Shown here piece by piece: positions 3,001 to 29,622 of a DNA stretch of 46,406 bases. The stretch covers positions 16,774,945 through 16,821,350 of the forward strand of contig NC_090416.1 of assembly GCF_036365525.1 (NCBI RefSeq). The letters run 5' to 3'. Under the pieces are notes generated by a model. The model was not told the origin of the DNA, searched no databases, and was given only the letters and a program-made list of their open reading frames with translations. Every line of letters starts with the position of its first letter. The first letter of the stretch is position 1. The DNA comes from Heterodontus francisci. Its lineage: Eukaryota. The position numbers and the translations under genes were made by a program.

Positions 3001-3085
3001 CAGGCATCAAGATCGGTGCAGGCTTGGAGGGCCGAATGGCCTGTTCCTGTGTGGTACTGTTCTTTGTTCTTGTTCTTTGTTCTCT
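1..3085 (+). mobile_element. CR1-clade LINE copy A (5' part outside window), disrupted ORF2 (APE endonuclease + RT)
   Basis: Fragments [60 protein letters not shown]; stops at 393-395, 669-671, 2083-2085 plus frameshifts; 3' tail GGCCGAATGGCCTGTTCCTG followed by TGTTCT repeats. Confidence 0.95.
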
Positions 3086-3297
3086 CTATCNNNNNNNNNN
3101 NNNNNNNNNNNNNNNNNNNNNNNNNNNNNNNNNNNNNNNNNNNNNNNNNNNNNNNNNNNNNNNNNNNNNNNNNNNNNNNNNNNNNNNNNNNNNNNNNNNN
3201 NNNNNNNNNNNNNNNNNNNNNNNCTTGCTCTATCTATTTGTCTGTCTGTCCATCTCTATCTATCTGTCTGTCCATCTCTGTCTGTCTGTCTGTCTAT
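3086..3297. repeat. (TCTA/TCTG)n microsatellite, partly N
   Basis: Visible tetranucleotide repeats; unmasked paralogues at ~19501-19711 and ~35114-35326. Confidence 0.9.
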
Positions 3298-3350
3298 CCC
3301 TCAGTACTGACCCTTTGACAGTGCGGCACTCCCTCAGTACTGACCCTTTG

Positions 3351-4580: not shown

Positions 4581-5877
4581 TTGAAGATATCGTACCTGCT
4601 GTATTCAATACCTGTCCAGGTCTTTAAAGCCCAAAGTGGCCGTAACTGTTCCTATCTGTGCAGAGAGCCCTTGGCAGTAATATAATATAATGAAAATGGC
4701 CTGGCTGAAACTCCCCGGGTCTGGATATCTCAGTACAGATTGGGGAAGGGGTGGTCGGAGTGCTGGAATCTGGGCCTTCCCAGCAAGTGTCCTGTAAGGG
4801 AACTGAATGACCTCAACGAAGGAACGAGTTCACAGAGGGAGATGAGGCTGATGTGATTGTCGTGTGTGCGAACAAGAGGAGGCCATTCAGCCCTTCGAGA
4901 CTGCTGTGCCATTCCATTAGATCATAGCTGGTCTGTACCTTAACCCCATATACCCTGCCTTAGCTCCATAGTCCTTGCTGCCCTGACCCAATAAAAATCT
5001 ATCAACCACAATCTTTATAACTCCAATTTTTAATGAAGTGCATTTCTATAGCGTCTTTCACAACCTCAGGATGTTCCCAAAGTGCTTCGCAGCCAATGAA
5101 ATACCTTGAAAAGCAATGTTGGGAAATGAAGACTGGGATGTAGAGCAGGAGTTCAGTTCAGTTCTCCTGAGGGGCCCAGTCCAGATAATGGGTTGTTTTG
5201 TTGTAAATGTGTGACGTGTCCAAGAATGTAACCGTTTAACGGTGTTTCTGAGATTTCCGTCCTGTTTCTGTGTGTTTCAGAGCAGGGGAACTGGGCCCAG
5301 ATGCTGCTGCTCTCTGCTGCTTATCAGACAGTGAACAGGGAGGTTTCGGTTCCTCCCCGGGGCTCCTCTCCCACCCCCTGCAGCGAGTGACCACACCACC
5401 TGCACCACATCACAAACAAGACAAAAACAGCATCGATTTGGGTATCAGGATCTAAAATAAGGCTTTCAGAACACCGCCCAGATCCCCTGTGGTTGATGAC
5501 GAGGGCCTGATCTGAGCTGCATTCAGTGCCATTCTCAGACCCAGTCTGGAACCTGGCTGTTCGGCCATGTGAATCATCAACATTGTGGATTTAACTGGAC
5601 TGATAAACGTTTGATGGCCTTTAAGATACTCCTCAAAACCTAGCTCTTTAACCGAGCTTTTGGTCACCTGCTCTAATATCTCCGAATGTGGCTCAGCATT
5701 AAACTTTGTTTGCTGACGCCCCTTGCGACGTTTTATTACATTAAAGGCGCCATATAAATGCAGATTGGTGGTTGTTTGCAGATGACAATTCGTTGAAGAC
5801 CTTAATAACTAACCGACTGCAGGCCATGAAGTACATCAACTAAAGCCACAATTAAAACTCAAGGCTTCTGATGTAAG

Positions 5878-6195
5878 TACAGTACTGAAGGAATACCGCA
5901 CTGCCGGAGGGGCTATCTGTCACTTGCAATCTGCCCTCTGTTAAAGATACTGCAACCCCTATTTAGAAAAAGAGTTGGGGAGTTCTCCCCCATCCCCGTG
6001 TCTTGGCTGATATTTATCCTTCAATCAATATCACAAAAAAAATCACCTGGGTCATTATCTCATTGTTATGTGTGTGGGATCATGCTGTGCGCAAATTGGC
6101 TGCTGTGTTTCCTACATTACAACAGTTGACTAGACTTCAAAAAAAAAACTTGGTTGGCTGTAAAGCGCTGTGGGACATTCTGAAGCTGTGAAAGG
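5878..6195 (+). mobile_element. Degenerate DeuSINE (SacSINE1-like) fragment
   Basis: CAGTACTGA..GGA, GGGGAGTTCTCCCC, GTCATTATC.CATTG, CTTCAAAA..TTGGCTGTAAAGCGCT; homologous to 14280-14530; paralogues ~22290-22600 and ~37903-38215. Family name from recall. Confidence 0.6.
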
Positions 6196-6479
6196 AGGCT
6201 CACTATCACCTTCTCAGGGGGACAACTAGTGATGGACAATAAATGGCTGGTCTTACCAGAGATGCCCACATCTCGAGAATGAAGAAGTGCAGGTTCTGTC
6301 TCTCTGGACGCTGTGATGTCCCCTTGTAAAACATACTGAAACTAAATAGTTCTAAAAACATCTGCATAAATACAGCATCCTCAGACTCGAGATGAGGATT
6401 AAACCTGCATTTAATACCTCTTTAAGTGCGTGGCCCCTTTAAGGTGTGCTGAGGGACTGGGCTTTTCCAGCACTCTCTG

Positions 6480-7165
6480 TTCATTTACTCTTTGAGGTGA
6501 TGCAACCGATACCCTCTCCACAGCCGGAGGCTCAGTTAACAGCCCTTCCCTCTTATGGCCCCTAGTTCTGCTCTCACCCGCAAGTGGAAACGTCTAGCCT
6601 TATCGAGTCCTTTCATAACCTTAAAGGGCTCCATCAGGTCCTACCCTCCCCCCCTCTCAGTCTTCTCTTTTCAACCTATCCTGGTAGCCTATCTCAGTAC
6701 TGGTACCATCCCAGCACATCTTTTCTTGCACCTTCTCCAGTGTCATTTTATAACATGGAGACGGGAACAGTGCACAGTAATTCCAAGTGTGGTCTAACTG
6801 AGGTTCCCTACAAGTTTGACTTAATGTATCTGCTTCTCAATTCTATCCCTCGAGAAATTAACCCCGGTGTTTGGATTGCTTTTTATATGGCCTTATTCAG
6901 CAGCATTGCTGCAGTTACTCTATAACCCTCGATCCACAACCCTATTTAGACTCTTTCTTCCCCACCTCCCCCTCCCTCCAGGACTAGGTGACCTCATTCA
7001 TCCTCCCAAAAAGTAGCACCTCACACTTATCCATACTGACCTTCATTTGCCAATTACACACCCATTCTGCATGTCACTTCATGTCCTGTCATTTGTGATG
7101 GACCTAATATTAACTGCAGCCTCCCCCAATTTGGAGTCATCAGCAAACTCTCAAATTGTACCTGG
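6480..7165 (-). mobile_element. Degenerate CR1 RT fragment, antisense (approximate ends)
   Basis: Minus strand ~7125-7150 reads EFADDSKLG; ~6780-6800 reads VRPHLE; paralogues in units 2 and 3. Confidence 0.6.
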
Positions 7166-7309
7166 TGCTAGTCTGTCCCGTGCCATCCCATCTCTCGGAC
7201 CAGGATAGTGAGCAGTTCTCCCTGGGAGGGACGGTATTTTATTCCAAACAGATGCTTTTCCTGTAAATCACATACAATGATGGTCTAGTATGGGAGAAAC
7301 TACACTTTA

Positions 7310-7830
7310 GGATGGGAGGGTTGTTGAGAGTGTGCAGAGGAGGTTGACCGGAATGGTTCCAGGGATGGGGGACTTCTCGTTACAAGGTCAGCCTGGAGAA
7401 GCTGGGATTGTTTTCCTTGGAGCGAAGGAGATTGCAGGGAGATTTAATAGAGGTGGACAAGATGATGACAGATCTGGATAGAGTAGACAAGGAAAAACAG
7501 TTCCCATTAACTGATGGTACAAGGGCTAGGGGACACAGATTGAAAGTTTTGGGCAAGAGATACAGGGTGGGGGGGGGTGGCGGCGGGGGGGATGTGAGGA
7601 AGAATTTATTTATTTTTAAATGCAGTGAGTGGCAATGACCTGGAACTCACTGCCTACCAGAGTGGTGGAAGCGGGAGACAATGATTTCAGTAAGAAACTG
7701 GGGTGGGGGGGGGGGGGGGGGGGGGACACTTAAATTCGCAGGGGGCCCCGGGGGGATTGGGACATACTGGATTGCACCACGGGGAGCTGTCATGGATCCG
7801 AGGGGCCGAATAGCCTCCTTCTGTGCCAGA
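7310..7830 (+). mobile_element. CR1 3' fragment
   Basis: LEKLGLFSLERRRLQGDLIEV...RGHRLKV and GGCCGAATAGCCTCCTTCTGTG tail; paralogues ~23720-24210 and ~39335-39825. Confidence 0.8.
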
Positions 7831-8022
7831 AATGAAATCGAATTCGTTTAAAATAGTTAACTCTGCTTGAATATTTTTTTATTAAATCTGCCCAAACGAA
7901 AAATCCTCAAATCGCCAATATTCGTACAGTTAACCACTGACTTGCACCAATATCCACCTCAACCCACCCCCACCCCCCCTCCACAGAAAAAAAATAACAC
8001 AGCAATTTGAATTCATGTCATC

Positions 8023-8028
8023 TTTATT
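8023..8028 (-). terminator. Polyadenylation signal AATAAA, cluster 1
   Basis: AATAAA ~330 nt after the C stop, followed by a GT/T-rich tract; second AATAAA at 7878-7883. Confidence 0.75.
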
Positions 8029-8357
8029 AAAACAGCCACACACACAGAGATACACTTTTCAATTCTAACAAATGGTACTACTGAGAGAAAGGAGAGAGGG
8101 AGCAGAACCCATCCAGCTCCAAATGGGAATGTACTCCCGGGATAGGTGGTCCTGATATTCACTGTCACCCACCTGCGCCCCCCAGTTAAAATTGGATCCA
8201 AAATTGGATCGTTAAACTGCGATTGAAGTGACTGTTTCAACATCGTTGGCCACATTTGCTACAGTGATTACATTGTAAAACAACAACAACAACATTCCAC
8301 ATATTGAATAATATTTCATCAGCAATAAATCAAACTCTAAACCCCAGTTGCCCCCTC

Positions 8358-8686
8358 TCAGTCGGAACAAGCGGTGGAGCTGATGGTTTTGAGGAGAGGT
8401 GAGCTCAGAGAGCCGTGGTCCACACTGCAGGTATAGCTGGAGCCCTTATTCCAGGCAGTGGCGGGGACTCTCAGGTAACTGCTCAGGCTGTAGCTTTGAT
8501 CACTGTCCGTGGACACGGTGCCTGTGGTCACCCCGCTGTCTGTCTCTTTATCATCCACTCTCCAGAGAACCCGCACGAAACCCGGCTTAAAGCGGCTCAC
8601 CAGGCAGGACAGAGTAGCCCATCCCGAGTCTATTTCTTCCGAGGAAGGAGGGAGCAGGAGAACTGATGGTTTCCGATCCTCACTAC
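8358..8686 (-). CDS. Ig light-chain constant exon, cluster 1 (type I/sigma-cart-like)
   Basis: C1-set domain SEDRKPSVLLLPPSSEE...ATLSCLVSRF...W...YSLSSYL...YTCSVDH...ACSD*; acceptor CACACAG| at 8688-8687, phase 1 matching the J donor. Confidence 0.96.
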
Positions 8687-9689
8687 CTGTGTGTGTGAGA
8701 GACAGGGTGGAAGAAAGGAATCTCACTGTTAGTATCAATCATTTTTTCTAAAAGGCACATCCAGAATTAGTAACACATACTATAATTTAAAACAAACATT
8801 TAACTTGACTTCAGACTTAGGTAGAGACAGTAAATAATATAACAGCCTGAGTGTTTCCAGCACTCGATTTCAGATTTCCAGCATCTGCAGGATTTTGCTT
8901 TGATTGGATTAAAATTAAATATTTAGTCCAATCTTAACTCCCTGTCAATTGAGAGCTGGACTTGTACATGGATTCGAGACATTCAGATAAATTAATTAAC
9001 TGAATATTAAATACAACAGACAATATCGAATTGTTTAAAATTCAGGGGCAGATTAAAATCAAAAGTTTAAAAATTGAGGAAGTTTCACATTTCGGATAGG
9101 CTGTACTGGAGGTCTTATGGAGGTGCTCGGAGTATGTATTGGGAGTAACTCAACCTCCCAGATCCACACTCAGAGTTCGGTGATCACCTCACTAGGAAAA
9201 ATTATTTATTTATAAAAAAAAGTTTTAAAAGTAATAAAGTTCGGGGCGGTTTCCATTTAGAAAGTAGGTTAGACACTTCACATGAAGGAACGACAGTCGG
9301 AAGGAGGGGTTTGGGAAGGGAGACGGGGACTGGGGGGTAGAGGGACCGGGTGCGTGAGGAACAGACAAGATGGGGGGAGGGGGCGCAGAATGAGGCCATT
9401 CGCTCCATCGAGTCCCTGCCGCAGCCGAACCCCACTTCCCAACTTTGGGAGTCTTTTTTTGAGGTGGGGGAGGGGGTGCTAGTGTCAAACTCGACCCCCT
9501 TTGAGTGTGAGTAAAATTCCTGTTTGTAAATCTTCCAGCAACACCCGGGGCAGGCTCGCTATTTATACAACAGTGCAGCGAATAGACGGAGAAGTCCACA
9601 CCTGCACACTGCAGACCTGGCCGAACAGACTCGAGGGGCTGAATGGCCTTTCTCCCCTGTTCATTCTGCATTTTTTTTTGCCAATGGAG

Positions 9690-9842
9690 TTTTTCCTCGG
9701 TTCTGAGGAAAGGTCAGAGACCCGAAACTGTTCACCGTTTCTCCCTCTCTCTCCGCAGAGGCTGCCCAGACCTGCTGAGTATTTCCAGCATCTTCTGTTT
9801 TTTTTATTTCAGATTTCCAGCATCCGCAATTGTTTTGCTGCT
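9690..9842 (+). mobile_element. Penelope-like terminal repeat fragment in the J-C intron with degenerate minimal hammerhead core
   Basis: CTGAGGA-AAGGTC-AGA-GACCC-GAAAC followed by AGACCTGCTGAGTATTTCCAGCA...TTTCAGATTTCCAGCATC; shorter copy at ~8845-8901; paralogues start at ~26055 and ~41675. Confidence 0.6.
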
Positions 9843-10021
9843 ATTTTAGTGTTTATTTTTCTACCCTCCAGAATCCAAATTCCCAGCACTGAATCAGTGG
9901 ACAGAAAAATAAAAATCTGACCCAATTTGTTTTCACCGTTATCAGGGCAGATCCGATTCTGCAACAATAAATGAATAAATAATTGAAACAATATGAATGA
10001 TAGGATGAGGGAATTACTTAC

Positions 10022-10058
10022 TCCGTAAACTCAGGGCGGTCCCAGGTCCGAAGGTAAA
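10022..10058 (-). CDS. Ig light-chain J segment, cluster 1 (FTFGPGTALSLR)
   Basis: FGxG motif; donor A|GTAAGT at 10021; abuts the heptamer. Confidence 0.96.
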
Positions 10059-10097
10059 CACAGTGCAGTGTTTTAATGGGACGGGTCACCTAAAACC
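10059..10097 (+). other. J recombination signal, 23-bp spacer
   Basis: CACAGTG + 23 nt + CCTAAAACC (7/9 match to ACAAAAACC). Confidence 0.92.
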
Positions 10098-10411
10098 CAG
10101 GCTGGGAAGAAAGAGGGGAAATATTAATAATCTGTCCTTTATCACATTCCCTTTCACATTCTGCCTTTCACAGGGGCCGGAATGCTGAGAGGCTGGAGAA
10201 AGATTTTCACATATCAGTGAGGAAACCTTGAGAATATCAGTGTTTACCTACCCAGCTAATAGCCCAAATATTGGGGAAAATCCAAATAAACCCATGGAAT
10301 TCCAGTGAGATTTTCCACAAGATACATAAGGAATATTTCTGAAGCTCATCCCACAGTCTCAGGCAGGAATATTTCAGTAGCTGTTGGAATTCTGAGTGGT
10401 TCTGTTGATAC

Positions 10412-10439
10412 AGTTTTTGTATTGCCCTGTCTCACTGTG
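10412..10439 (-). other. V recombination signal, 12-bp spacer
   Basis: CACAGTG + AGACAGGGCAAT + ACAAAAACT. Confidence 0.96.
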
Positions 10440-10767
10440 TATGTAGCTGCTGAGCCATCCCCGGCAGCACAGTAATAGACGGCGGAGTCTCCCGGTTCCA
10501 AGCTGCCGATGGTCAGAATGTGACTGTTACTGGAGGTGTCTCTGGAAGGTTTAAAACGGTCCGTGAAGCCGGTGCCTCGATAGATGCTACCATCTTTATA
10601 GTGCACTAACACCCCCACCGGAGCCTCCCCGGGTCTCTGTCGGTACCAGTACATGTAGTAACTGCCCACATTGCCGTTCTGCATCGCACACTTTAACTCG
10701 GAGGTCTCACCGGCGGAGACTGGGTCTGAAATTGGGGTCTGATTGAGGACAGGAACCGCCAGGACAC
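10440..10767 (-). CDS. Ig light-chain V exon, cluster 1 (germline, unrearranged)
   Basis: GVLA-VPVLNQTP...LKCAM...WYRQRPG...DRF...LEPGDSAVYYCAAGDGSAAT; acceptor TTGAAG| at 10769-10768. Confidence 0.96.
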
Positions 10768-10932
10768 CTTCAACACAAAACACAAGAGAGAGAAAAAAAA
10801 CACATTCAGTTTATTGGAGCAAAAAAACACACTGATAAATAAACAGGCCGGGCTACCAAATCCCTTTGCTTCCTAATCTAATGGTTTACAAATGAATAAT
10901 TGAGTAACGTTCTGTTAACATAAGTCTCTCAC

Positions 10933-10981
10933 CTGTTAAATGGAGTAGCAGGGTCCCCAGGAGATACATTACTGCAGCCAT
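10933..10981 (-). CDS. Leader exon, cluster 1 (MAAVMYLLGTLLLHLT-G)
   Basis: ATG at 10981, 49 nt, hydrophobic peptide, donor G|GTGAGA, 165-bp intron in phase with V. Confidence 0.9.
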
Positions 10982-11088
10982 TCCCTCCGGGGGGGAAAAA
11001 AACCCGTGAAGAATTAGAGAGCAGGGTTTTACTGTAACTCCAGAAAGTGGATCCAGTTACAGTGCCGGACAAGGTGAGACCAGTATCT

Positions 11089-11111
11089 ATTATATGAACC
11101 TGTATGCAAAT
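11089..11111 (-). promoter_or_regulatory. Ig V promoter: octamer ATTTGCAT and TATA-like TATAAT, cluster 1
   Basis: Octamer 11111-11104 in light-chain orientation, TATAAT 11094-11089, CCAAT at 11212-11208, poly-G tract ~11134-11175. Confidence 0.88.
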
Positions 11112-12029
11112 ACAGGGAGGGTTGAGAGGAGCAGGGGCGGCGGGGGGGGGGGGGGGGGGCGGGGGGGGGGGGGGTGGACCAGACCAGATTTTTTTTATTG
11201 AGCCTCTATTGGTCCCCAATTAAACATTTCCATGTATTTATTTCCACCGAGTTGAGGGTTAATTCACAATAATTTCTGATTTTAACCCCCCCTTCTCATG
11301 TCATGAGTGTGAGATTTAAAAGAACAACTGTAGAAATTGCACATTTTATCCCAGATGGTCAAAGACAAAAGCCCTTCAGAATCCAGTGCCTTGAATTCAT
11401 CCAGAACAAGTTTAACCCAGCGATAGTTAAGGATTTGTTTTTTTTTATATTTGGGTCTGCAATGTGTACTTAAACACATATCTTTATATCCAACACGCTG
11501 GTGTTTGAAACAAAGCAGTTCATTGGAAGGATTGGAATGGAAGAGATTGACTGGACTGCTTCTCTGAGCTGCTCTTTTTTCCTATCCGCCACTGTACAAG
11601 TGCACTGCTTGTCCTGGCGTTTGAGCCGAGTGTCGGGTCAAAACACTCGTTTCTCACTCAGGCCGACGTTCAGAAACAGCCAGAATCAACTCCAATATCC
11701 GTTTTAATTGGTAATGCAACGAGGAGTGAGATTCTGACCGGGCAAGCTGACTGCTCGGCTAGTTTCTGTGTTGTGTCCGGATCCTGTGTTAAGTCCAGTT
11801 TCAATGAAATGTGTTTTCCTGCTGCAACAGTTCCTGCCCTGACTTTTTTTTGTTGCAACTAAACCACATGTATCGGAACCTCAGTCCCAGGAATACATTT
11901 GTTTTAACATTCCATTTCAGATGTTTTATGTCAATCACTCGATGCCAAGGGAAAACTTGCAACAAGTTGCTCGTGAGAGGAGTTAGTTTCTTTAAAATGA
12001 ATATTTTCTATCTTTTTATTTAAAATTCA

Positions 12030-12802
12030 CTTAATTGGATGTGGACATCACTTGGCCCTGCCCGCATTTATTGCCCATCCCTCATTGCCGTTGAGGGCGG
12101 CACAGTGGCGCAGTGGTTAGCATTACAGCCTCACAGCTCCAGGAACCCGGGTTCGATTCCGGGTACTGCCTGTGTGGAGTTTGCAAGTTCTCCCTGTGTC
12201 TGCGTGGGTTTTCTCCGGGTGCTCCGGTTTCCTCCCACAAGCCAAAAGACTTGCAGGTTGATAGGTAAATTGGCCATTATAAATTGTCACTAATATAGGT
12301 AGGTGGTAGGGTAATATAGGGACAGGTGGGGATGTTTGGTGGGAATATGGGATTAGTGTAGGATTAGTATAAATGGGTGGTTGATGTTCGGCACAGACTC
12401 GGTGGGCCGAAGGGACTGTTTCATTGCTGCATCTCTAATCTAATCTAAAGGTGGTGGTGGAGTCGCCTTCTTGAACTGCTACAGTGCAGTGGTTTTTGTA
12501 CAACAGAACTGAGGGCAGTTAAGAGTCAACCACATTGCCGTGGGTCTGGAGTCACATGTCGGCCAGACCAGGTGAGGACGGCAGATTTCCTTCCCTAAAA
12601 GGACATTTGTGAAACAGATGGTTTTTTGTTAATGAACATTCAATTTATGGTCACCATTACTGAGACTAGGTTTCAATTCCAATTTTTCTTTTAATTAATT
12701 AGTTGAATTTAAATTCCATGGTGGGATTTGAACTCGTGTCTCCAGAGCATTATCCTGGGCCTCTGGATTAGTAATATCGAGTGCCATAACTACTACGCCA
12801 CC
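12030..12802 (-). mobile_element. Old antisense SINE/LINE-tail composite (host of the SINE insertion)
   Basis: Minus-strand tRNA-like head GGTGGCGTAGTAG...GAGTTCAAATCCCAC; 3' part similar to plus-strand 6197-6285; uninterrupted in units 2 (~28394-28820) and 3 (~44010-44442). Confidence 0.55.
12096..12447 (+). mobile_element. tRNA-derived V-SINE (HE1-like), present only in unit 1
   Basis: A box TGGCGCAGTGG (12106), B box GGTTCGATTCC (12150), V-domain TGTGTGGAGTTTGC...CTCCGGTTTCCTCCCACA, CR1-like tail GGGCCGAAGGG...(TCTAA)n; empty site GCCGTTGAG|AAG in units 2 and 3. Confidence 0.88.
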
Positions 12803-12824
12803 TTGTGATGGATCAATATTAATT

Positions 12825-13185
12825 CTAGAAATGTGATAGGATTTGAGCCAGTGAAAGGGAGAGGGTGGGAAGAAGAACAGCAGGGAAGGTCTGTGACAGG
12901 GGTGGAGGGCAGGAGAGATTAAATGACAAAAAGGGTGTCAAGGTGCAAAGCCAAAGGGAGTGGTAATAAAAGATGTGTCTGGAGGAGATGTGAATGGCAG
13001 GATCGGAACACAAAGTAAAGGAAATAAGAGGTAAACAAGAGAGATAAAATAACAAATCAGCAAAGAAAAGGGCAACAAAAATGAGGGCAGGGGGGTTACA
13101 AACTAAAATTGTAGAATTCAGTGTTGAGTCCGGAAGGTTGTAGAGTGCCCAGTCGAAAGATGAGGTGCTGTTCCTGCAGTTAGCC
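12825..13185 (-). mobile_element. Penelope-like element 3' fragment (GIY-YIG C-terminus)
   Basis: Minus strand 13179-13102 translates LQEQHLIFRLGTLQPSGLNTEFYNFS, followed by a pyrimidine-rich tail; paralogues ~28842-29203 and ~44465-44825. Confidence 0.75.
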
Positions 13186-13441
13186 TCCGATTACTGACAT
13201 GTTCAGTCAAGTCAGTGTCGACTAGCTGCCCCCTAGACAGAGAATTTCACCCCTCCCCCATTCAAAATCCATTTCTGATTGGTCTCCACAGCAGAAACAG
13301 ACCCACCTCCCTCCCCTCCCACCAGGCAGATTCTCTGGGTCATTTTCAACTAACCCTAACCTGCATTACTATAGAGACCTCAGGATGTCCTAAAGACAGA
13401 CAAATAAACACCTGTTTTGAAGTTTTGTCATTGTAACATCG

Positions 13442-13543
13442 TAATAAAGTGTTTTCCCCTGCTCCCCTTGACCCCCTCCCTGTATTTGCATATTGACTAA
13501 TATATAGATACTAGTCTTCTCCGGGTTCCCGGAGTTACAGTAA
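13442..13543 (+). promoter_or_regulatory. Inverted orphan copy of the Ig V promoter, unit 1
   Basis: CCCTCCCTGTATTTGCATA is 19/19 identical to the reverse complement of 11103-11121; TATATA; GGAGTTACAGTAA 13/13. Homology is clear; function is unknown. Confidence 0.7.
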
Positions 13544-13600: not shown

Positions 13601-13722
13601 CCATGTAGTTGAATGGAGAGTGCACATATGTAGTTAAATGGAGTCATCCTCGTATGTAGTTAAATGGAGTCATCCACGTATGTAGTTAAATGCAGTCATC
13701 CACGTATGTAGTTAAATGCAGT
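13601..13722. repeat. 26-bp minisatellite TATGTAGTTAAATGGAGTCATCCACG (~5 copies; ~4 in units 2 and 3)
   Basis: Period 26 (13627, 13653, 13679, 13705); paralogues 29681-29775 and 45301-45396. Confidence 0.9.
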
Positions 13723-13970
13723 GTGCCAGTGTGCAGTAAAATGGGGTTGTGCACATGTCTAATGGAAAGCAGTTCAGCACCTCTAGGTTCATAGAATCTC
13801 TCACTTTGCACAGCAGATGTCACATGGCTGCAGCTTTGCCCAGGGAGCCTACCCGGTTCACACAGGATAGGCCAGGTGTTAAAGCAAGAGCATTTGGTGT
13901 TGCCTATTGAAGCTTGCACAGCGGTTAAAGGAAAATACAATTAAAGCTCACAAGATGGGAATCTTGTAAA

Positions 13971-14530
13971 GTGTCAGCCATGGCCTCGTGGCTTCAAGTC
14001 ACAATCCAGAGACTTGAGCACAAAAAGCAGTCTCACATTCGCCGTGTAGTACTGAGGGAGTGCTGCACTGTCAGAGGGTCAGTACTGAGTGAGTGCCGCA
14101 CTCAGAGGGTCAGTACTGAGGGAGTGCTGCATTGTCAGAGGGTCAGTCCTGAGGGAGCGCTGAACTGTTGGAGGGTCAGTACTGAGGGAGTGCTGAACTG
14201 TTGGAGGGTCAGTACTGAGGGAGTGCTGCACTGTCGGAGGGTCAGTACTGAGGGAGTGCTGCACTGTCTGAGGTGCCATATTCACAAGTCCCCCTCAGGT
14301 GGACATTATCGATCCCATGACTCTATTTGAAGGAGAGCAGGTGCCCTGGACAATATATATTCCAACATTAACACCTAAAGCTGTAACTGGTCATTATCAC
14401 ATTGCTATTTGTGGGAGCTTGCTGTGTAAATGACTGTCAGATTTCCTGCATTTCAACAGTGACTACATTTCAAAACACACTTCAAAAGTACGTCATTAGA
14501 TGTAAACCACTTTGGGGCAGCCTAGTGATC
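13971..14530 (+). mobile_element. DeuSINE (SacSINE1-like) with internal 33-bp minisatellite (7 copies)
   Basis: Unit GGGTCAGTACTGAGGGAGTGCTGCACTGTCAGA at 14048-14273, then TCAGGTGGAC..GATCCCATG..GTCATTATCACATTGCT. Confidence 0.7.
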
Positions 14531-15202
14531 AGACCTCTCTGTCTCTCCATCTGTCTATCTNNNNNNNNNNNNNNNNNNNNNNNNNNNNNNNNNNNNNNNN
14601 NNNNNNNNNNNNNNNNNNNNNNNNNNNNNNNNNNNNNNNNNNNNNNNNNNNNNNNNNNNNNNNNNNNNNNNNNNNNNNNNNNNNNNNNNNNNNNNNNNNN
14701 NNNNNNNNNNNNNNNNNNNNNNNNNNNNNNNNNNNNNNNNNNNNNNNNNNNNNNNNNNNNNNNNNNNNNNNNNNNNNNNNNNNNNNNNNNNNNNNNNNNN
14801 NNNNNNNNNNNNNNNNNNNNNNNNNNNNNNNNNNNNNNNNNNNNNNNNTTCTCTCCATATCTATCTATCTCTCTATCTATCTATCTATCTATCTGTCTAT
14901 CCATCTATCTGTCCATCTCTTGCTATCTATCTATCTATCTGTTTATCTATCTGTCTGTTTATCTATCNNNNNNNNNNNNNNNNNNNNNNNNNNNNNNNNN
15001 NNNNNNNNNNNNNNNNNNNNNNNNNNNNNNNNNNNNNNNNNNNNNNNNNNNNNNNNNNNNNNNNNNNNNNNNNNNNNNNNNNNNNNNNNNNNNNNNNNNN
15101 NNNNNNNNNNNNNNNNNNNNNNNNNNNNNNNNNNNNNNNNNNNNNNNNNNNNNNNNNNNNNNNNNNNNNNNNNNNNNNNNNNNNNNNNNNNNNNNNNNNN
15201 NN
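14531..15202. repeat. (TCTA/TCTG)n microsatellite, largely N
   Basis: Visible TCTA repeats at 14535-14560 and 14850-14967 bordering the N runs. Confidence 0.8.
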
Positions 15203-18200
15203 GCGGAGTTCCAGACCGGTAAGTGCAAAAACCTTACTTCGGGGATTCTCGGACAGACTCGGAGGGCGGAATTAACCTCGGTGATTCTCGGACAGACTCG
15301 GAGGGCGGAGTTAACCTCGGGGATTCTCGGACAGACTCGGAGGGCGGAGTTAACCTCGGGGATTCTCGGACAGACTCGGAGGGCGGTGTTCTCCTCGATG
15401 GGTCGAAGGGCCTGTTTCAGTGCTGTATCTCTAAATAAAAAATAAAAATAAATAAAATAATATTTATAGTAGAAATCTAGCACTGGGGACCATATCGTTT
15501 ATTATAACAATTTAGTAAGGATTTAATAAGTATTTATTTTATATTAATTAACTAATTAGTGATAGAAATGTCAGTAAAAGGGGTGAAGTGCTTCACCTGT
15601 GAGATGTGGGAAGTCCGTGACACTTCCAGCGTTCCGGGCGACTCCGCCTGCAGGAGGTTTACCCAGTTGCAGCTCCTCACAGACCACATGGATCGGTTGG
15701 AGCGGCAACTGGAAGCACTTGGGAGCATGCAGGTGGCAGAGAGCGTCATAGACAGGAGTTTTAGAGAAGTGGTTGCACCCAATGTGCAGGCAGATAGATG
15801 GGTGACCGCTAGAAGGGGCAGGCAGTCAGTGCAGGAATCCCCTGTGGCTATCCCCTTCTCCAACAAGTATACAGTTTTGGATACTGTTGGGGGGGATGGC
15901 CGAGCAGGGGAAAACAACAGCAGCAGCCAGAGCAGTGGCACCACAGCTATCACTGTTGTTCAGCAGGGAGGGACAAAGCGCAAAGAACAATAGTTATAGG
16001 GGACTCTATAGTCAGGGGCACAGATCGGCACGTCTGTGGACGTGAAAGAGACTCCAGGATGGTATGTTGCCTCCCTGGTGCCAGGGTGAAGGATGTCTCT
16101 GAACGGACAGGGGGCATTCTGAAGGGCGAGGGTGAACAGCCAGAGGTTGTGGTACACATCGGTACCAATGACAAAGGCAGGAAGAGTGCTGAGGGCCTGC
16201 AGGGGGAGTTTAGGTAGTCAGGTAGAAAGTTGTAATCTCTGGATTTAACCCTGTGCCACGTGCCAGAGAGGATAGAAATAGGAAGATAGTGCAGCTAAAC
16301 ACGTGGCTGAGCAGCTGGTGTCGAAGGGAGGGTTTCAGATATCTGGACCATTGGGCTCTCTTCAGGGACAGATGGGACCTGTACAAGAAGGACGGGTTGC
16401 ATCTAAACTGGAGGGGCACTAATATCCTGGCTGCAAAGTTTGCCAGCGTCACTCGGGAGGGTTTAAACTAGTGTGGCAGGGGGGTGGGAACCAGAGCAGT
16501 GGGACAGCTAGAAAAATAAATGAGGAGGACATAGTAAATAAGGCCAGTAAGACTAAGTGGAAGAGCAGGCAGGAAGATGTTGCTGAGCACAGCGGGACTG
16601 GTGCTCTGAAGTACATTTCTTTCAATGCGAGAAGTATAGCAGGTAAGGTAGATGAAATTAGAGCTTGGATTAGTACTTGGAAATATGATGTTGTTGCTAT
16701 TACAGAGACTTGGTTGAGGGAAGGGCAGGATTGGCAGCTAAATGTTCCAGGCTTTAGAAGCTTCAGGTGGGATAGAGGGGGATGTAAAAGGGGTGGGGGA
16801 GTTGCATTACTGGTTAAGGAGATTATCACAGCTGTACTGCGGGAGGACACCTCAGAGGGGTCATGCAGCGAGGCAATATGGGTGGAGCTCAGGAATAGGA
16901 AGGGTGCAGTCACGATGTTGGGGGTTTACTACAGGCCTCCCAACAGCCAGCGGGAGGTAGAGGACAAGATATGTAGACAGATTTTGGAAAGATGTAAAGG
17001 TAACAGGATTGTGGTGGTGGGTGATTTTAACTTCCCCGATATTGACTGGGTCTCACTTAGTGCTAGGGGCTTGGATGGGGCAGAATTTGTGAGGAGCATC
17101 CAGGAGGGCTTCTTGAAACAGAATGTAGATAGTCCAACTAGGGATGGGGCCATTCTGGACCTGGTATTGGGGAATGAGCCCGGCCAGGTGGTCGAAGTTT
17201 CAGTGGGTGAACATTTCGGGAGCAGTGACCATAATTCCATAAGTTTTAAGGTACTTGTGGATAAGGATAAGAGTAGTCCTCGGGTGAAGGTGCGAACTTG
17301 GGGGAAGGCTAATTATAACAATATTAGGCAGGAATTGAAGAATTTAGATTGGGGGGGCGGCTGTTTGAGGGTAAATCAACATCTGACATGTGGGAGTCTT
17401 TCAAACGTCAGCTGATTAGAATCCAGGACCAGCATGTTCCTGTGAGGAAGAAAGACAAGTTTGGCATGTTTCGGGAAATTTGGATAACACTGGATGTTGT
17501 GAGCCTAGTCAAAAAGGAAAAGGAAGCATTTGTAAGGGCTGGAAGGTTAGGAACAGACGAAGCACTTGAGGAATATAAAGACAGTGGGAAGGAACTTAAG
17601 CAAGGAGTTAGGAGGGCTAAAAGGGGTCATAAAAAGTCATTGGCAAACAGGATTAAGGAGAATCCCAAGTCTTTTTATACATGTATAAAGAGCAAGAGGG
17701 TACCAGGGAAAGGGTTGGCCCACTCAAGGATAGAGATGGGAATCTATGTGTGGAGCCAGAGGAAATGGGCGAGGTGCTAAATGAGTACTTTGCATCAGTA
17801 TTCACCAAAGAGAAGGACTTGGTGGATGATGAGCCGAGGGAAGGGAGTGCAGATAGTCTCAGTCATCTCATTATTAAAAAGGAGGAGGTGTTGGGTGTCT
17901 TGCAAAGCATTAAGGTAGATACGTCCCCAGGGCCTGATGGGATCTACCCTAGAATACTGAGGGAGGCAATGGAAGAAATTGCTGGGGCCTTGACAGAAAT
18001 CTTTGCATCATCATTGGCTACAGGTGAGGCCCCAGAGGACTGGAGAACAGCCAATGTTGTTCCTTTGTTTAAGAAGGGTGGCAAGGATAATCCAGGAAAT
18101 TATAGGCCTGTGAGCCTTACGTCAGTGGTTGGGAAATTATTAGAGAGGATTCTTCGGGATAGAATTTACTCCCATTTGGAAACAAACGAACTTATTAGCG

Positions 18201-19500
18201 AGAGACTGCATGGTTTTGTGCTGGGGAGGTCATGTCTTACTAATTTGATTGAGTTTTTTGAGGAAGTGACGAAGATGATTGATGAAGGAAGGGCAGTGGA
18301 TGTTATCTAAATGGAATTTATTAAAGCCTTTGACAAGGTCCCGCATGGCAGACTGGTACAAAAGATAAAGTCACATGGGATCAGAGGTGAGCTGGCAAGA
18401 TGGATACAGAACTGGCTCGGTCATAGAAGACAGAGGGTATCAGTGGATGGGTGTTTTTCTGAATGGAGGGATGTGACTAGTGGTGTTCCGCAGGGATGAG
18501 TGCTGGGACCTTTGCTGTTTGTAGTATTATAAATGATTTGGAGGAAAATGTAGCTGGTCTGATTAGTAAGTTTGCGGACGACACAAAGGTTGGTGGAGTT
18601 GCGGATAATGATGAGGATTGTCAGAGGATACAGCTGGATATAGATCGGTTGGAGACTTGGGCGGAGAAATGGCACATGGAGTTTAATCCGGACAAATGTG
18701 AGGTAATGCATTTTGGAAGGACTAATGCAGGTGGGAGGTATACAGTAAATGGCAGAACCCTTAGGAGTATAGACAGACAGAGAGATCTGGGCGTACAGGT
18801 CCACAGGTCACTGAAAGTGGCAACGCAGGTGGATAAGGTAGTCAAGAAGGCATACGGCATGCTTGCCATCATTGGTCGGGGCATAGAGTATAAAAATTGG
18901 CAAGTCATGTTGCAGCTGTACAGAACCTTAGTTAGGCCACACTTAGAATATTGCTTGCAATTCTGGTCGCCACACTACCAGAAGGACGTGGAGGCTTTGG
19001 AGAGGGTACAGAGGAGGTATACCAGGATGTTGCCTGTTCTGGAGGGCATGAGCTATGAGGAGAGGTTGGAAAAACTCGGATTGTTTTCACTGGAACGATG
19101 GAAGTGGAGGGGCGACATGATAGAGGTTTACAAAGTTATGAGCGGCATGGACAGAGTGGATAGTCAGAAGCTTTTTCCCAGGGTGGAAGAGTCAGTTACT
19201 AGGGGACATAGGTTTAAGGTGAGAGGGGCAAAGTTTAGAGGGGATGTGTGAGGCAAGTTTTTTACACAGAGGGTGGTGAGTGCCTGGAACTTGCTGCCAG
19301 GGGAGGTGGTGGAAGCAGATACGATAGCGACGTTTAAGTGACATCTTGACAAATACATGAATAGGAAGGGAATAGAGGGATATGGGCCCCGGAAGTGCAG
19401 AAGTTGTTAGTTTAGGCAGGCATCAAGATCGGTGCAGGCTTGGAGGGCCGAATGGCCTGTTCCTGTGTGGTACTGTTCTTTGTTCTTGTTCTTTGTTCTC
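15203..19500 (+). mobile_element. Near full-length CR1 LINE copy B, disabled (ORF1 zinc finger/coiled coil/SGNH esterase; ORF2 APE-RT)
   Basis: ORF1 from ~15568: CFTC...C, heptad Leu, IGDSIV, VHIGTND, DGLHL; ORF2 from ~16471 with stops and frameshifts (17415, 18310, 18499, 19251); CR1 tail. Confidence 0.95.
15230..15388 (+). repeat. 39-bp CpG-rich tandem repeat in the CR1 5' region (~4 copies)
   Basis: Unit GGCGGAGTTAACCTCGGGGATTCTCGGACAGACTCGGAG; 13-aa periodicity RRAELTSGILGQT in the ORF track. Confidence 0.9.
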
Positions 19501-19764
19501 TGTCTATCTGTCCATCTCTCTGTCTATCTATCTGTCTATCTGTCTATCTGACTATCTATCTATCGATTTATCTATCTGTCCATATCTATCTATCTATGTA
19601 TCTATCTATCTGTCTATCTATCCACCTGTCCATCTCTCTCGCTCTATCTATTTGTCTGTCTGTCCATCTCTATCTATCTGTCTGTCCATCTCTGTCTGTC
19701 TGTCTGTCTATCCCTCAGTACTGACCCTTTGACAGTGCGGCACTCCCTCAGTACTGACCCTTTG

Positions 19765-20990
19765 GGAACTGAATATTCCAGGGTATTTGACAGTTTGGAA
19801 TGACAGGAAGCAAGGAAAAGGAGGTGGTGTAGTTCAGTTAATAAAGGATGAGATCAGTACAGTAGTGAGAAATGATCTTGGCTCAGAAAATCAAGATGTG
19901 GAATCAGTTTGGGTGGAGATATGAAATAGCAAAAATTCATACAGGAGCTGCACTGTGGGACAGAGTATAAATCAAGAAATAAGGGGGGGCTTGTAAGGAA
20001 AATACTGCAGTAATCCTGGGTGATTTTAATCTTCATATAGATTGGAGTAATCAAACTGGTAAAGTTAGATAGAGGATGAGTTCATGGAGTGTACTCAGGA
20101 CAGTTTCTTAGAACAATACACTCTGGAACCAATCCGGGAGCAGGATATTTTAGACCTGGTAATGAGTAAGGAGACGGAATTAATTAATGACCTCTTAGTA
20201 AAGGAAGAATAGAAAAGTAGAATATTATTTACATGGAGAGAGACTGCAGAATGCTGCAGTACAGAGGGATCTGGGTGTCCTTGTACATGGATCACAAAAT
20301 GTTAACATGCAGGTTCAGCAAGTAATTAGGAAGAGAAATTGAATGTTGGTATTTATTGCAATGGGGATGGAGTATAAAAGTAGGGACATCTTGCTACAAC
20401 TGTACCGGGTATTGGTGAGACCGCACCTAGAGTACTGCATACAGTTTTGGTCTCCTTATTTAAGGAGGGATATACTTGCATTGGAAGCAGTTCAGAGAAG
20501 GTTCACTTGGCTGATTTCTGGGATGAAGGGATTGTCTTGTAAGGAAAGGTTGAGAAGGTTGGGCCTGTACTCATTGGAGTTTAGAAGAATGAGAGGTGAT
20601 CTTATTGAAAAGTGTAACGTTCTGAAGGGGTTTGACGGGGTAGATACTGAGAGGATGTTTCCCCTCGTGGGGGAATCTAGAACTAGGGGGAATAGTTACA
20701 GAATACGGGGTCTCCCATTTAAGACGGAGATGAGGAGGAATTTCTTCTCTGAGGGTCATTAATCTTTGGAATTCTCTTCCCCAGGGAGCAGTGGAGGCTG
20801 GGTCATTGAATATATTCAAGGCTGAGTTGGAGAGTTTTTTGATCTACAAGGGAGTTGAGGGTTATGGTGGGGGGCACACAGGAAAGTGGAGATAAGGTCA
20901 CAATCAGATCATCCGTGATCTTATCGAATGGCAGAACAGTCTCGATGGGCCGAATGGCCTTCTCCTGTTCTTATTTCTTATGCTTTTATG
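19765..20990 (+). mobile_element. Older internally deleted CR1 fragment, unit 2
   Basis: Paralogue of 3351-4580; ORF 20343-20762. Confidence 0.85.
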
Positions 20991-23900: not shown

Positions 23901-24391
23901 AAATACAGTTCCCATTAACTGATGGTACAAGGGCTAGGAGACACAGATTGAACGTTTTGGGCAAGAGATACAGGGGAGAGGGGGGTGGGGGGATGTGAGG
24001 AAGAAATTATTTATTTTTAAATGCAGTGAGTGACAATGACCTGGAACTCACTGCCTACCAGAGTGGTGGAAGCGGGAGACAATGATTTCAGTAACACTTG
24101 AAGGAAATAAATTCGCAGGGGGCCACGGGGGAGTGGGACTGACTGGATTGCACTACGGGGAGCTGTCATGGATCCGAGGGGCCGAATAACCTCCTTCTGC
24201 GCCAGAAATAAAATCGAAGACGTTTAAAATAGTTAACTCTGCTTGAATATTTTTTATTAAATCTGCCCAAAAGAAAAATCCTCAAATCGCCAATATTCGT
24301 ACAGTAAACCACTGACTTGCACCAATATCCACCTCAACTCACCCCCAAACCCCCACAAAAAAATAACAGAGCAATTTGAATTCATGTCATC

Positions 24392-27342: not shown

Positions 27343-27449
27343 TCCCTCCGGGGGGGAAAAAAACCCGTGAAGAATTAGAGAGCAGTGTTTTACTGTAATT
27401 CCAGAAAGTGGATCCAGTTACAGTGCCGGACAAGGTGAGACCAGTATCT

Positions 27450-27472
27450 ATTATATGAACCTGTATGCAAAT
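27450..27472 (-). promoter_or_regulatory. Octamer + TATA promoter, cluster 2
   Basis: ATTTGCAT 27472-27465; TATAAT 27455-27450. Confidence 0.88.
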
Positions 27473-29460
27473 GCAGGGAGGGTTGAGAGGAGCAGGGGCG
27501 GCGGGGGGGGGGGGGGGGGGGAGGGGGGGGGGGGGGACCAGACCAGATTTTTTTCATTGAGCCTCGATTGGTCCCCAATTAAACATTTCCATGTATTTAT
27601 TTCCACCGAGTTGAAGGTTAATTCACAATAATTTCTGATTTTAACCCCCCCCCCCCCTTTCTCATGTCAAGAGTGTGAGATTTAAAAGAACAACTGTAGA
27701 AATTGCACATTTTATCCCAGATGGTCAGAGACAAAAGCCCTTCAGAATCCAGTGCCTTGAATTCATCCAGAACAAGTTTAACCCAGCGATCGTTAAGGAT
27801 TTGTTTTTTTTAATATTTGGGTCTGCAATGTGTACTTAAACACATATCTTTATATCCAACACGCTGGTGTTTGAAACAAAGCAGTTCATTGGGAGGATTG
27901 GAATGGAAGAGATTGACTGGACTGCTTCTCTCAGCTGCTCTTTTTTCCTATCCGCCACTGTACAAGTGCACTGCTTGTCCTGGCGTTTGAGCCGAGTGTA
28001 GGGTCAAAACACTCGTTTCTCACTCAGGCCGACGTTCAGAAACAGCCAGAATGAACTCCAATATCCGTTTTAATTGGTAATGCAACGAGGAGTGAGATTC
28101 TGACCGGGCAAGCTGACTGCTCGGCTAGTTTCTGTGTTGTGTCCGGATCCTGTGTTCAGTCCAGTTTCAATGAAATGTGTTTTCCTGCTGCAACAGTTCC
28201 TGCCCTGACTTTTTTTTGTTGCAACTAAACCACATGTATCGGAACCTCAGTCCCAGGCATACATTTGTTTTAACATTCCATTTCAGATGTTTTATGTCAA
28301 TCACTCGATGCCAAGGGAAAACTTGCAACAAGTTGCTCGTGAGAGGAGTTAGTTTCTTTAAAATGAATATTTTCTATCTTTATTTTAAATTCACTTCATG
28401 GGATATGGGCATCACTTGGCCCTGCCCGCATTTATTGTCCATCCCTCATTGCCGTTGAGAAGGTGGTGGTGGAGCCGCCTTCTTGAACTGCTCCAGTGCA
28501 GTGGTTTTTGTACAACAGAACTGAGGGCAGTTAAGAGTCAACCACATTGCCGTGGGTCTGGAGTCACATGTAGGCCAGACCAGGTGAGGACGGCAGATTT
28601 CCTTCCCTAAAAGGACATTTGTGAAACAGATGGTTTTTTGTTAATGAACATTCAATGGTAGTTTTATGGTCACCATTACTGAGACTAGGTTTCAATTCCA
28701 ATTTCTTTTAATTAATTAGTTGAATTTAAATTCCATGGTGGGATTTGAACACGTGTCTCCAGAGCATTATCCTGGGCCTCTGGATTAGTAATATCTAGTG
28801 ACATTACTACAACGCCACCTTGTGATGGATCAATATTAATTCTAGAAATGTGATAGGATTTGAGCCAGTGAAAGGGGGAGGGTAGGAAGAAGAACAGCAG
28901 GGAAGGTCTGTGACAGGGGTGGAGGGCAGGAAAGATTAGATGACAAAAAGGGTTTCAAGGTGCAAAGCCAAAGGGAGTGGTAATGAAAGATGTGTCTGGA
29001 GGAGGTGTGAATGGCAGGTACTGAACACAAGGTAAAGGAAATAAGAGGTAAACAAGAGAGATAAAATAACAAATCAGCAGAAAAAAAGGGAAACAAAAAT
29101 GAGGGCAGGGGGGTTACAAACTAAAATTGTAGAATTCAGTGTTGAGTCCGGAAGGCTGTAGAGTGCCCAGCCGAAAGATGAGGTGCTGTTCCTGGAGTTA
29201 GTCTCCTAATACTGACATGTTCAGTCAAGTCAGTGTCGACTAGCTGCCCCCTAGACAGAGAATTTGACCCCTCCCCCATTAAAATTCCGTTTCTGATTGG
29301 TCTCCACAGCAGAAACAGACCCACCTCCCTCCCCTCCCACCAGGCAGATTCTCTGGGTCATTTTCAACTAACCCTAACCTGCATTAATATAGAGACCTCA
29401 GGGTGTCCTAAAGACAGACAAATAAACACCTGTTTTGAAGTTTTGTCATTGTAACATCGT

Positions 29461-29622
29461 AACCCAATGCACAATGGAAATAAATATTTGGAAATGTTTA
29501 ATCAGGGACAAATATATTTTTAATAAAGTGTTTTCCCCTGCTCCCCTTGACCCCCTCCCTGTATTTGCATATTGACTAATATATAGATACTAGTCTTCTC
29601 CGGGTTCCCGGAGTGACAGTAA
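29461..29622 (+). promoter_or_regulatory. Inverted orphan Ig promoter copy, unit 2
   Basis: TGGAAATAAATA..TGGAAATGTTTAAT..GGGAC.AATA, CCCCTGCTCC, octamer 29563-29570, TATATA. Confidence 0.7.

What the first reader, a model, noticed from the sequence alone, without database searches (positions are those of the whole stretch)
13442..13543. Every cluster carries a second, inverted, gene-less Ig promoter pointing away from V
Seen: 2.1-2.4 kb upstream of each V promoter lies a plus-strand paralogue of that promoter. Collinear blocks against the reverse complement of 11029-11260 are CCCCTGCTCC (10/10), CCCTCCCTGTATTTGCATA (19/19, containing the octamer), ATAGATACT(G/A)GTCT and GGAGTTACAGTAA (13/13). 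In units 2 and 3 (29461-29622, 45082-45243) it extends to TGGAAATAAATA-NN-TGGAAATGTTTAAT-NN-GGGAC-N-AATA. The octamer and a TATA box are intact in all three copies although sequence between the blocks has diverged, and no leader or V follows. Known: octamer+TATA is the core B-cell Ig promoter and octamers also act in enhancers. Inference: it is a retained divergent promoter/enhancer giving each cluster autonomous control, or a relic of an inverted cluster. If active, it would transcribe into the 5' end of the co-oriented CR1 and antisense toward the neighbouring cluster.
Basis: partly seen in the sequence, partly recalled or inferred. Interest (0 to 1): 0.8.

Follow-up and report, generated by a model that had tools for sequence, protein, structure and literature searches.

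The report
Orphan inverted copy of antibody promoter
Each of three near-identical horn shark antibody light-chain gene units carries, about 2 kb upstream, a short backwards-facing duplicate of its own promoter with no gene behind it; it is most likely an old leftover copied along with the unit, and nothing yet shows that it is used.

Summary
The window holds three tandem ~15.6 kb units, 93-97% identical. Each has a minus-strand Heterodontus francisci type I (sigma-cart, name recalled) V-J-C light-chain cluster and a plus-strand LINE. In each unit, 2.09-2.37 kb upstream of the V promoter, lies a plus-strand, collinear paralogue of that promoter: 63 bp at 81%, E 1.6e-7, plus 53 bp at 81% in units 2 and 3. 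It has a canonical octamer and a TATA-like box at the same spacing. Homology stops 47 nt before the leader ATG. No leader, V, J or C remnant follows.

The evidence offered for retention does not hold. The three copies are recent duplicates and count as one observation. Differences among units are as frequent in the copy as elsewhere. Unit 1 has lost the distal third by a 61-bp deletion. The block pattern of identity fits uniform ~23% divergence.

Best reading: an orphan inverted partial promoter duplicate, older than the array expansion, possibly still able to fire in B cells. A selected enhancer or antisense-promoter role remains open (~0.3).

The parts
13456..13543 (+). Unit 1 orphan promoter copy (core only): CCCCTGCTCC, octamer 13484-13491, TATA-like box about 13500-13507, and terminal block GGAGTTACAGTAA 13531-13543. 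The distal block is missing (61-bp deletion, junction at about 13441-13444).
29475..29622 (+). Unit 2 orphan promoter copy, full length: distal block TGGAAATAAATA..TGGAAATGTTTAAT..GGGAC..AATA (29475-29527), and a core with octamer 29563-29570. The terminal block carries one substitution (GGAGTGACAGTAA).
45096..45243 (+). Unit 3 orphan promoter copy, full length; octamer 45184-45191. One substitution in the distal block and one after the TATA-like box.
11029..11252 (-). Unit 1 true V promoter and start of the 5'UTR: distal TGGAAAT blocks, CCAAT, poly-C tract (11134-11174), octamer 11104-11111, TATA-like box about 11087-11095, and a 5'UTR palindrome ACTGTAACT/AGTTACAGT (11063-11031). Homology to the copy ends at 11029, 47 nt before the leader ATG (10981-10979).
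27390..27605 (-). Unit 2 true V promoter; octamer 27465-27472.
43012..43226 (-). Unit 3 true V promoter; octamer 43087-43094.
8361..10981 (-). Unit 1 light-chain cluster served by the true promoter: leader exon 10981-10933, V exon about 10789-10361 with an RSS after it, J 10058-10020, C exon 8702-8361. The last 108 residues of the C exon are identical to a Heterodontus francisci light chain, P0001.
13603..14560 (+). What the copy points at: a 26-bp tandem repeat (13603-13722), unassigned sequence, then a repeat-like stretch with a 33-bp internal tandem array (14048-14273) running into masked N. No exon-like feature.
15559..19400 (+). Co-oriented LINE about 2 kb downstream of the copy. It has an APE-type endonuclease domain and reverse transcriptase, split over several frames. 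The subfamily (CR1) was not tested.

Best explanation
The element is an orphan, inverted, partial duplicate of the sigma-cart V promoter. It covers roughly -150 to +50 relative to the inferred start site.

It arose once, well before the 15.6 kb unit was amplified. Copy-to-promoter divergence is about 18-23%, against about 3% between units. It has since been copied passively with every unit.

It lies head-to-head with the real promoter, with the distal promoter ends facing each other across a repeat-rich 2.1-2.4 kb spacer. Its 5'UTR end points outward into tandem repeats, SINE-like sequence and a decayed LINE.

It keeps a canonical octamer and a TATA-like box at the native spacing. It could therefore bind Oct factors and start some non-coding plus-strand transcription in B cells as a by-product (inferred). 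No signal shows that selection maintains it, and no gene, exon or known RNA lies behind it.

Whether it once headed a second, inverted V gene or was only ever a promoter-sized duplication cannot be decided.
For: Shown:
- Significant collinear homology confined to about 150-230 bp (z = 17), with sharp ends. Downstream residual score z = 0.5. The only upstream signal is a non-collinear G-run.
- No V, J, C or leader on the plus strand (rows printed for 2 of 7 queries). No ATG-started frame over 51 aa within 400 bp. 0 Rfam matches at E <= 1 in 27200-30615.
- Units are 93-97% identical over their whole length, so the three copies are one evolutionary sample.
- Variable columns among units: 3 of 150 in the core copy and 4 of 89 just before it, against 208 of 5693 overall. 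Plain spacer windows at 11439-11888 are 1.3-2.0%.
- Of the 3 differences among the copies, all fall inside the 'conserved blocks'. Unit 1 lost 61 bp holding the whole distal block and a CCAAT.
- The identity-run pattern is compatible with random placement of differences: longest run >= 19, P = 0.17; top five runs, P = 0.05; number of runs, P = 0.59 (20,000 shuffles).

Inferred: competence to fire rests on the statement that octamer plus TATA alone gives B-cell-specific reporter expression (passage read in PMC13043367).
Against: The octamer is perfect in all copies, and the longest identical run (19/19) is the one that holds it. At 77% identity per column an intact 8-mer is expected only about 12% of the time (my arithmetic). 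The octamer-TATA spacing is kept to within 1 nt.

First-reader notes from four other windows of the same array report the same twin, from 230 kb before this window to 16 kb beyond it. One calls the orphan 'far better preserved than its gene' (unchecked). If those units are much more diverged, that would argue for constraint.

The test among units has very little power (about 5 differences expected). No expression, chromatin or cross-species data could be obtained.
Confidence: 0.5

Rival explanations
1. It is a selected cis-regulatory element. A promoter-derived enhancer or antisense (divergent) promoter gives each cluster its own octamer-dependent control. It would open chromatin for V-J joining, transcription or hypermutation, much as PAIR elements do in the mouse Igh V region.
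For: Canonical octamer plus TATA-like box at native spacing in 3 of 3 units. These and the true promoters hold the only octamers in 46.4 kb, so no other octamer-bearing element is present in the unit. The longest perfect run spans the octamer. Notes from other windows suggest the twin is array-wide (unchecked). PAIR elements show that repeated intergenic elements beside V genes can be regulatory and give antisense transcripts (passages of PMC10390877). Shark IgH genes are said to lack the upstream octamer, so octamer control would be specific to light chains (passage of PMC2435157).
Against: There is no excess conservation among units. The distal block and CCAAT are deleted in unit 1. Substitutions fall in the named blocks. 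Block clumping is not significant. All three copies are recent duplicates.
Confidence: 0.3
2. It is the stump of a former second V gene, or of a whole cluster, in the opposite orientation (a head-to-head V pair). The coding part was destroyed by repeat and LINE insertions and by deletion.
For: The geometry is head-to-head, with the copy running from the distal promoter into the 5'UTR. Downstream sequence is dominated by tandem repeats, repeat-like sequence and a LINE. One first-reader note elsewhere in the array speaks of the orphan copy and 'its gene' (unchecked).
Against: No leader, V, RSS, J or C remnant on the plus strand anywhere in the window at tblastn E <= 10 (rows printed for 2 of 7 queries). 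No residual DNA homology past the 5'UTR block (z = 0.5). 0 RSS heptamers within 28900-30100.
Confidence: 0.12
3. The two arms are the long terminal inverted repeats of a transposon-like insert (11029-13543; 27390-29622). The outer ends would be the perfect 13-mer, and the V promoter would itself lie inside one arm.
For: The best-conserved terminal block (13/13) sits exactly at both outer ends of the inverted pair, and homology stops sharply there. TA flanks CTGTAACTCC at both ends (read).
Against: The TA is part of the inverted repeat itself, so it is no target-site duplication. Pfam found 0 families in the 10 longest stop-free segments of the body (10 of the 20 listed). There are no further copies of the arm in the window beyond the six. 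An octamer-TATA promoter at this distance from the leader is the ordinary light-chain arrangement.
Confidence: 0.04

Closest known systems
Octamer/TATA promoters of immunoglobulin light-chain V genes (mammalian V-kappa type; nurse shark NS4 genes)
   Same: ATTTGCAT on the sense strand, followed after about 9 nt by a TATA-like box. It is a direct sequence paralogue of the neighbouring functional horn shark promoter. Nurse shark L chain genes are reported with an upstream octamer (passages of PMC2193156).
   Different: No leader or V exon follows. It lacks the poly-C tract and the promoter's own CCAAT position. Unit 1 lacks the distal third. Activity is untested.
PAIR (Pax5-activated intergenic repeat) elements of the mouse Igh distal V region
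   Same: A short repeated intergenic element that accompanies V genes, sits in antigen-receptor V-region DNA and, if active, would give non-coding or antisense transcripts (passages of PMC10390877).
   Different: PAIR is defined by a 470-bp repeat with Pax5-dependent activity and shown active chromatin. Here there is no shown binding, transcript or chromatin state. The element is promoter-derived. No sequence relation to PAIR was tested.
Bidirectional VH promoters with a divergent transcript
   Same: Octamer-dependent initiation pointing away from a V gene.
   Different: In those, one shared octamer serves two start sites within one promoter. Here there are two separate octamer/TATA modules 2.1-2.4 kb apart.
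Promoter remnants of V pseudogenes, and oppositely oriented V segments in teleost light-chain clusters (recalled)
   Same: Head-to-head orientation relative to a functional V. Decay of the coding part would leave an orphan promoter.
   Different: No V remnant is detectable here. Shark clusters are described as single V-J-C units in one orientation.

Membership tests
Paralogue of the adjacent sigma-cart V promoter | Statistically significant, collinear sequence similarity to the true promoter | tested here: met
   63 bp at 81%, E 1.6e-7, and 53 bp at 81%, E 5.6e-7. z = 17 against 200 shuffles. 125 of 163 columns identical with gap runs collapsed.
Functional Ig V-gene promoter | Canonical octamer with a TATA-like box a short fixed distance downstream | tested here: met
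   Octamers at 13484, 29563 and 45184 on the plus strand. TATA-like ATATATAG lies 9 nt after the octamer, against 8-9 nt in the true promoter.
Functional Ig V-gene promoter | A leader exon and V exon follow within about 100-150 bp | tested here: not met
   No plus-strand V, J, C or leader hit (rows printed for 2 of 7 queries). Downstream homology z = 0.5. Longest ATG frame 51 aa.
Functional Ig V-gene promoter | B-cell transcription starts about 25-30 nt after the TATA box | not testable with these tools
Enhancer or PAIR-like regulatory repeat | Sequence conserved above its flanks | tested here: inconclusive
   3 of 150 variable columns against 3.65% overall, with other spacer windows equally low. 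61-bp deletion in unit 1. Run-length tests P 0.05-0.59. Only recent duplicates were available.
Enhancer or PAIR-like regulatory repeat | Active chromatin, factor binding or antisense transcripts in B-lineage cells | not testable with these tools
Relic of an inverted V gene or cluster | Remnants of leader, V, RSS, J or C in the same orientation behind the promoter | tested here: not met
DNA transposon with terminal inverted repeats | Transposase remnant in the body, a target-site duplication, and other copies | tested here: not met
   0 Pfam families in 10 segments. The TA is part of the repeat. The 19-mer with up to 3 mismatches occurs only 6 times, all in promoters or copies.
Heterodontus francisci type I (sigma-cart) light-chain cluster (context) | V, J and C exons matching known horn shark type I light chains, with V and J unjoined | tested here: met
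   The best hits are H. francisci light chains. The last 108 C-exon residues are identical to P0001. V, J and C are separate hits. The equation type I = sigma-cart is recalled.

The most novel reading that the evidence does not exclude
Every horn shark sigma-cart cluster carries its own promoter-derived upstream control module. This would be an inverted octamer/TATA element acting as a cluster-autonomous enhancer or antisense promoter. It would open that one cluster for V-J joining, expression and hypermutation. It would be the first cis-regulatory element defined for the shark multi-cluster Ig system and a functional analogue of mouse PAIR elements.
Probability: 0.25. Interest if true: 0.65.

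Novelty: new member of a known kind. Interest (0 to 1): 0.3.

Why it matters
How sharks switch on one of many independent Ig clusters per B cell is an open question. I found no described enhancer for shark light-chain clusters in the searches I ran. An octamer module repeated with each cluster is a cheap, testable candidate.

If it is only a fossil, it still dates an inverted duplication older than the array. It also warns that agreement among units of a young tandem array is not evidence of constraint.

Tried and rejected
- Orthologous and diverged clusters.
- Metagenome scan for the octamer 19-mer. It gave 9 contigs, all with only 20-23 nt of match. These are chance hits.
- Rfam on 27200-30615. 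0 matches at E <= 1.
- The bacterial-type promoter scan is irrelevant to a eukaryote.
- Transposon reading. No transposase remnant, no true target duplication, and no extra copies.
- Fold-back duplication at the 5'UTR palindrome. Rejected because that would place the UTR ends together, whereas here the distal promoter ends face each other.
- RAG-mediated germline inversion. No RSS heptamer within 28900-30100.
- Extension of homology upstream. The z = 3.1 signal is a non-collinear G-run.
- Literature. PMC402057 (Shamblott and Litman 1989, the likely first description of this promoter) is not held. Of PMC2192082 only the abstract and reference list are held. I cannot say whether either mentions an upstream inverted copy. 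Searches listed no paper that describes one. Supplementary files were not consulted.
Only the V-exon frame and the C exon were used, each alone.

Full report
CONTEXT. The window holds three tandem units of about 15.6 kb. Self-BLAST gives 15207-30328 vs 30818-45949 at 96.6% over 15,187 columns, and 3224-12095 vs 19638-28459 at 97.0%. The stretch around the finding is 93-96% identical between units.

Each unit carries a minus-strand light-chain cluster. In unit 1 these are the leader 10981-10933, V about 10789-10361, J 10058-10020 and C 8702-8361. The V-exon frame finds Heterodontus francisci light chains first: 45 proteins at E <= 0.001 among 102 candidates, best 79% identity. The last 108 residues of the C exon are identical to P0001. 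So this is a horn shark type I cluster array. The name sigma-cart for type I is recalled, not tested.

V and J are separate hits, so the genes are unjoined.

On the plus strand each unit has a LINE with an endonuclease domain (E 1.2e-17) and reverse transcriptase pieces (E 5.9e-8, and a weaker one below Pfam's cut-off), split over several frames. Whether it is a CR1 was not tested.

THE OBSERVATION. It stands. On the plus strand, 2373, 2091 and 2090 bp from the V-promoter octamer, lies a collinear paralogue of that promoter. The matches are 13456-13517 vs 11137-11077 (63 bp, 81%, E 1.6e-7) and, in units 2 and 3, 29475-29527 vs 11246-11194 (53 bp, 81%, E 5.6e-7).

Local alignment carries unit 1 on to 13543 vs 11029 through several small gaps and ends in the perfect 13-mer. 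MAFFT places that last block differently. This is because the true 5'UTR holds a 9-bp palindrome, ACTGTAACT/AGTTACAGT. The 13/13 match with a roughly 21-nt gap is the better reading.

A global alignment of the unit 2 copy with the unit 1 promoter has 229 columns: 125 identical, 28 mismatched and 76 gapped. That is 125 of 163 (77%) when each gap run counts once. The copy-promoter score is 17 sd above 200 mononucleotide shuffles.

The six octamers of promoters and copies are the only ones in the window (expected 1.69; 2 of 100 shuffles reach six). The 19-mer around the octamer, with up to three mismatches, occurs only at these six places.

LIMITS OF THE HOMOLOGY. It runs from the distal TGGAAAT blocks to a point in the 5'UTR 47 nt before the leader ATG, and stops sharply at both ends. 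Downstream of the copy there is no residual similarity to the rest of the UTR, leader, intron, V, RSS or J (z = 0.5, with 82 of 200 shuffles as good). Upstream, the only signal (z = 3.1) is a non-collinear G-run.

The tblastn rows I printed (2 of the 7 shark light-chain queries run) show V, J and C only on the minus strand. Within 400 bp after the copy, no ATG frame exceeds 51 aa in any unit. Rfam finds nothing in 27200-30615.

What follows the copy is a 26-bp tandem repeat, then unassigned sequence, then a repeat-like stretch with a 33-bp internal array whose pieces recur elsewhere in the unit. After that come masked N, a 39-bp tandem repeat and the LINE. The 2.1 kb between the two promoters also looks repeat-rich. 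One stretch has a diverged inverted copy elsewhere in the unit. The rest of that impression is recalled resemblance to common shark repeats and was not tested. The ten longest stop-free segments of the spacer match no Pfam family.

IS IT RETAINED BY SELECTION? That carries no weight, because the units are 93-97% identical everywhere.

In a three-way alignment from the C exon to the masked run, 208 of 5693 ungapped columns vary (3.65%). The 150 columns holding the core copy have 3 variable sites, and the 89 before them have 4. At the mean rate about 5.5 would be expected in 150 columns, so 3 or fewer has a probability of about 0.2 (my arithmetic). Plain spacer windows at 11439-11888 are as quiet (1.3-2.0%). 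The true promoter window has 4 of 150.

The differences that do exist among the copies fall inside the named blocks: T to G in the 13-mer of unit 2, C to A just after the TATA-like box in unit 3, and T to A in TGGAAATGTTTAAT of unit 3. Unit 1 has lost 61 bp between two TAA triplets. That removes the whole distal block and a CCAAT.

Between copy and promoter, perfect blocks separated by diverged stretches could suggest footprints. But shuffling the positions of the differences 20,000 times gives a longest run of 19 or more in 17% of trials. The three longest runs are matched in 9%, the five longest in 5%, and as few runs in 59%. So the pattern is at most borderline and fits uniform divergence of about 23%.

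In favour of constraint are the perfect octamer (about 12% expected at that divergence; my arithmetic), the kept octamer-TATA spacing, and the unchecked notes from other windows. Because the element was flagged for its intact octamer, that 12% is inflated evidence.

AGE AND ORIGIN. Copy and promoter differ at 28 of 153 aligned bases (18%), plus many indels. Units differ by about 3%. The duplication is therefore several times older than the triplication seen here and was amplified with the unit. First-reader notes report the same twin at clusters 230 kb, 148 kb and 117 kb before this window and 16 kb beyond it. They are unchecked, but they fit an array-wide, inherited feature.

The arms lie head-to-head, with the UTR ends outward. 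This fits an inverted duplication of a promoter, or of a whole V gene whose body is gone. It does not fit a fold-back at the UTR palindrome.

A transposon reading, with the arms as terminal inverted repeats ending in the perfect 13-mer, was considered. It has no support beyond the geometry.

HOW IT MOST LIKELY WORKS. Shown: it is a gene-less, inverted, partial paralogue of the V promoter with an intact octamer/TATA core.

Inferred: octamer plus TATA alone is reported to give B-cell-specific reporter expression (passage read in PMC13043367). The copy may therefore bind Oct factors and start weak plus-strand non-coding transcripts. These would run into repeats and, 2 kb on, the decayed LINE. Only after about 11 kb would they be antisense to the next cluster.

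I hold a passive relic, with or without such by-product firing, at 0.5. A selected enhancer or antisense promoter is at 0.3, the stump of a lost inverted V at 0.12, and a transposon arm at 0.04.

COMPARISON WITH WHAT IS KNOWN. Octamers upstream of shark L chain genes are known (passages of PMC2193156). Shark IgH genes are said to lack them (passage of PMC2435157). PAIR elements of mouse Igh are the nearest functional analogue of the novel reading (passages of PMC10390877).

I found no paper describing a second inverted promoter in shark light-chain clusters. However, the 1989 genomic paper on these very genes is not held, and the 1995 skate paper is held only as abstract and references. Print priority is therefore open.

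I worked beside that place afterwards. There is thus no expression evidence and no cross-species evidence either way.

VERDICT. This is a real but probably ordinary feature: a promoter fossil multiplied by tandem duplication. It offers a cheap experimental test of a more interesting possibility. The scan's first readers noted the same thing in four other windows of this genome.

Noticed in passing
window 12096-12447: Unit 1 has about 352 bp that units 2 and 3 lack (their sequence is continuous at 28459/28460 and 44074/44075). It is probably a young SINE insertion; that resemblance is recalled and not tested. It accounts for the 2.4 kb against 2.1 kb spacing.
   Followed up: partly
window 11134-11174, 27500-27545, 43120-43165 (minus strand reads poly-C): A poly-C tract of 40 nt or more sits between the CCAAT region and the octamer of each true V promoter. 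Its length and interruptions vary among units, and it is absent from the orphan copies.
   Followed up: no
window 11031-11063 (-): The 5'UTR of the V gene holds a 9-bp perfect palindrome, ACTGTAACT ... AGTTACAGT, with a 15-nt loop. The orphan copy keeps only the second arm.
   Followed up: no
window 9200-9500 (J-C intron) and 10547-10697 (V exon): Variability among units jumps to 16 of 149 and 9 of 144 columns in part of the J-C intron, and to 12 of 150 in the V exon. Neighbouring windows show 0-2%. These are local hot spots of difference between otherwise near-identical units.
   Followed up: no
window 14048-14273, 30101-30328 and 3297-3350, 19711-19764, 35323-35379: A 33-bp tandem array inside a repeat-like element downstream of the orphan copy has short inverted relatives just after the 3' end of each LINE.
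   Followed up: no
window 15559-19400, 31166-35100, 1-3090: The LINE copies have endonuclease and RT domains but are broken into several frames, and they end in a TCTA-type microsatellite. A fragment of another LINE 3' end lies just before each LINE 5' end (30990-31030).
   Followed up: partly
whole window: No octamer occurs in the J-C intron or downstream of C (6 octamers in all, every one in a promoter or orphan copy). Any intronic or 3' enhancer of these clusters would have to work without a canonical octamer.
   Followed up: partly
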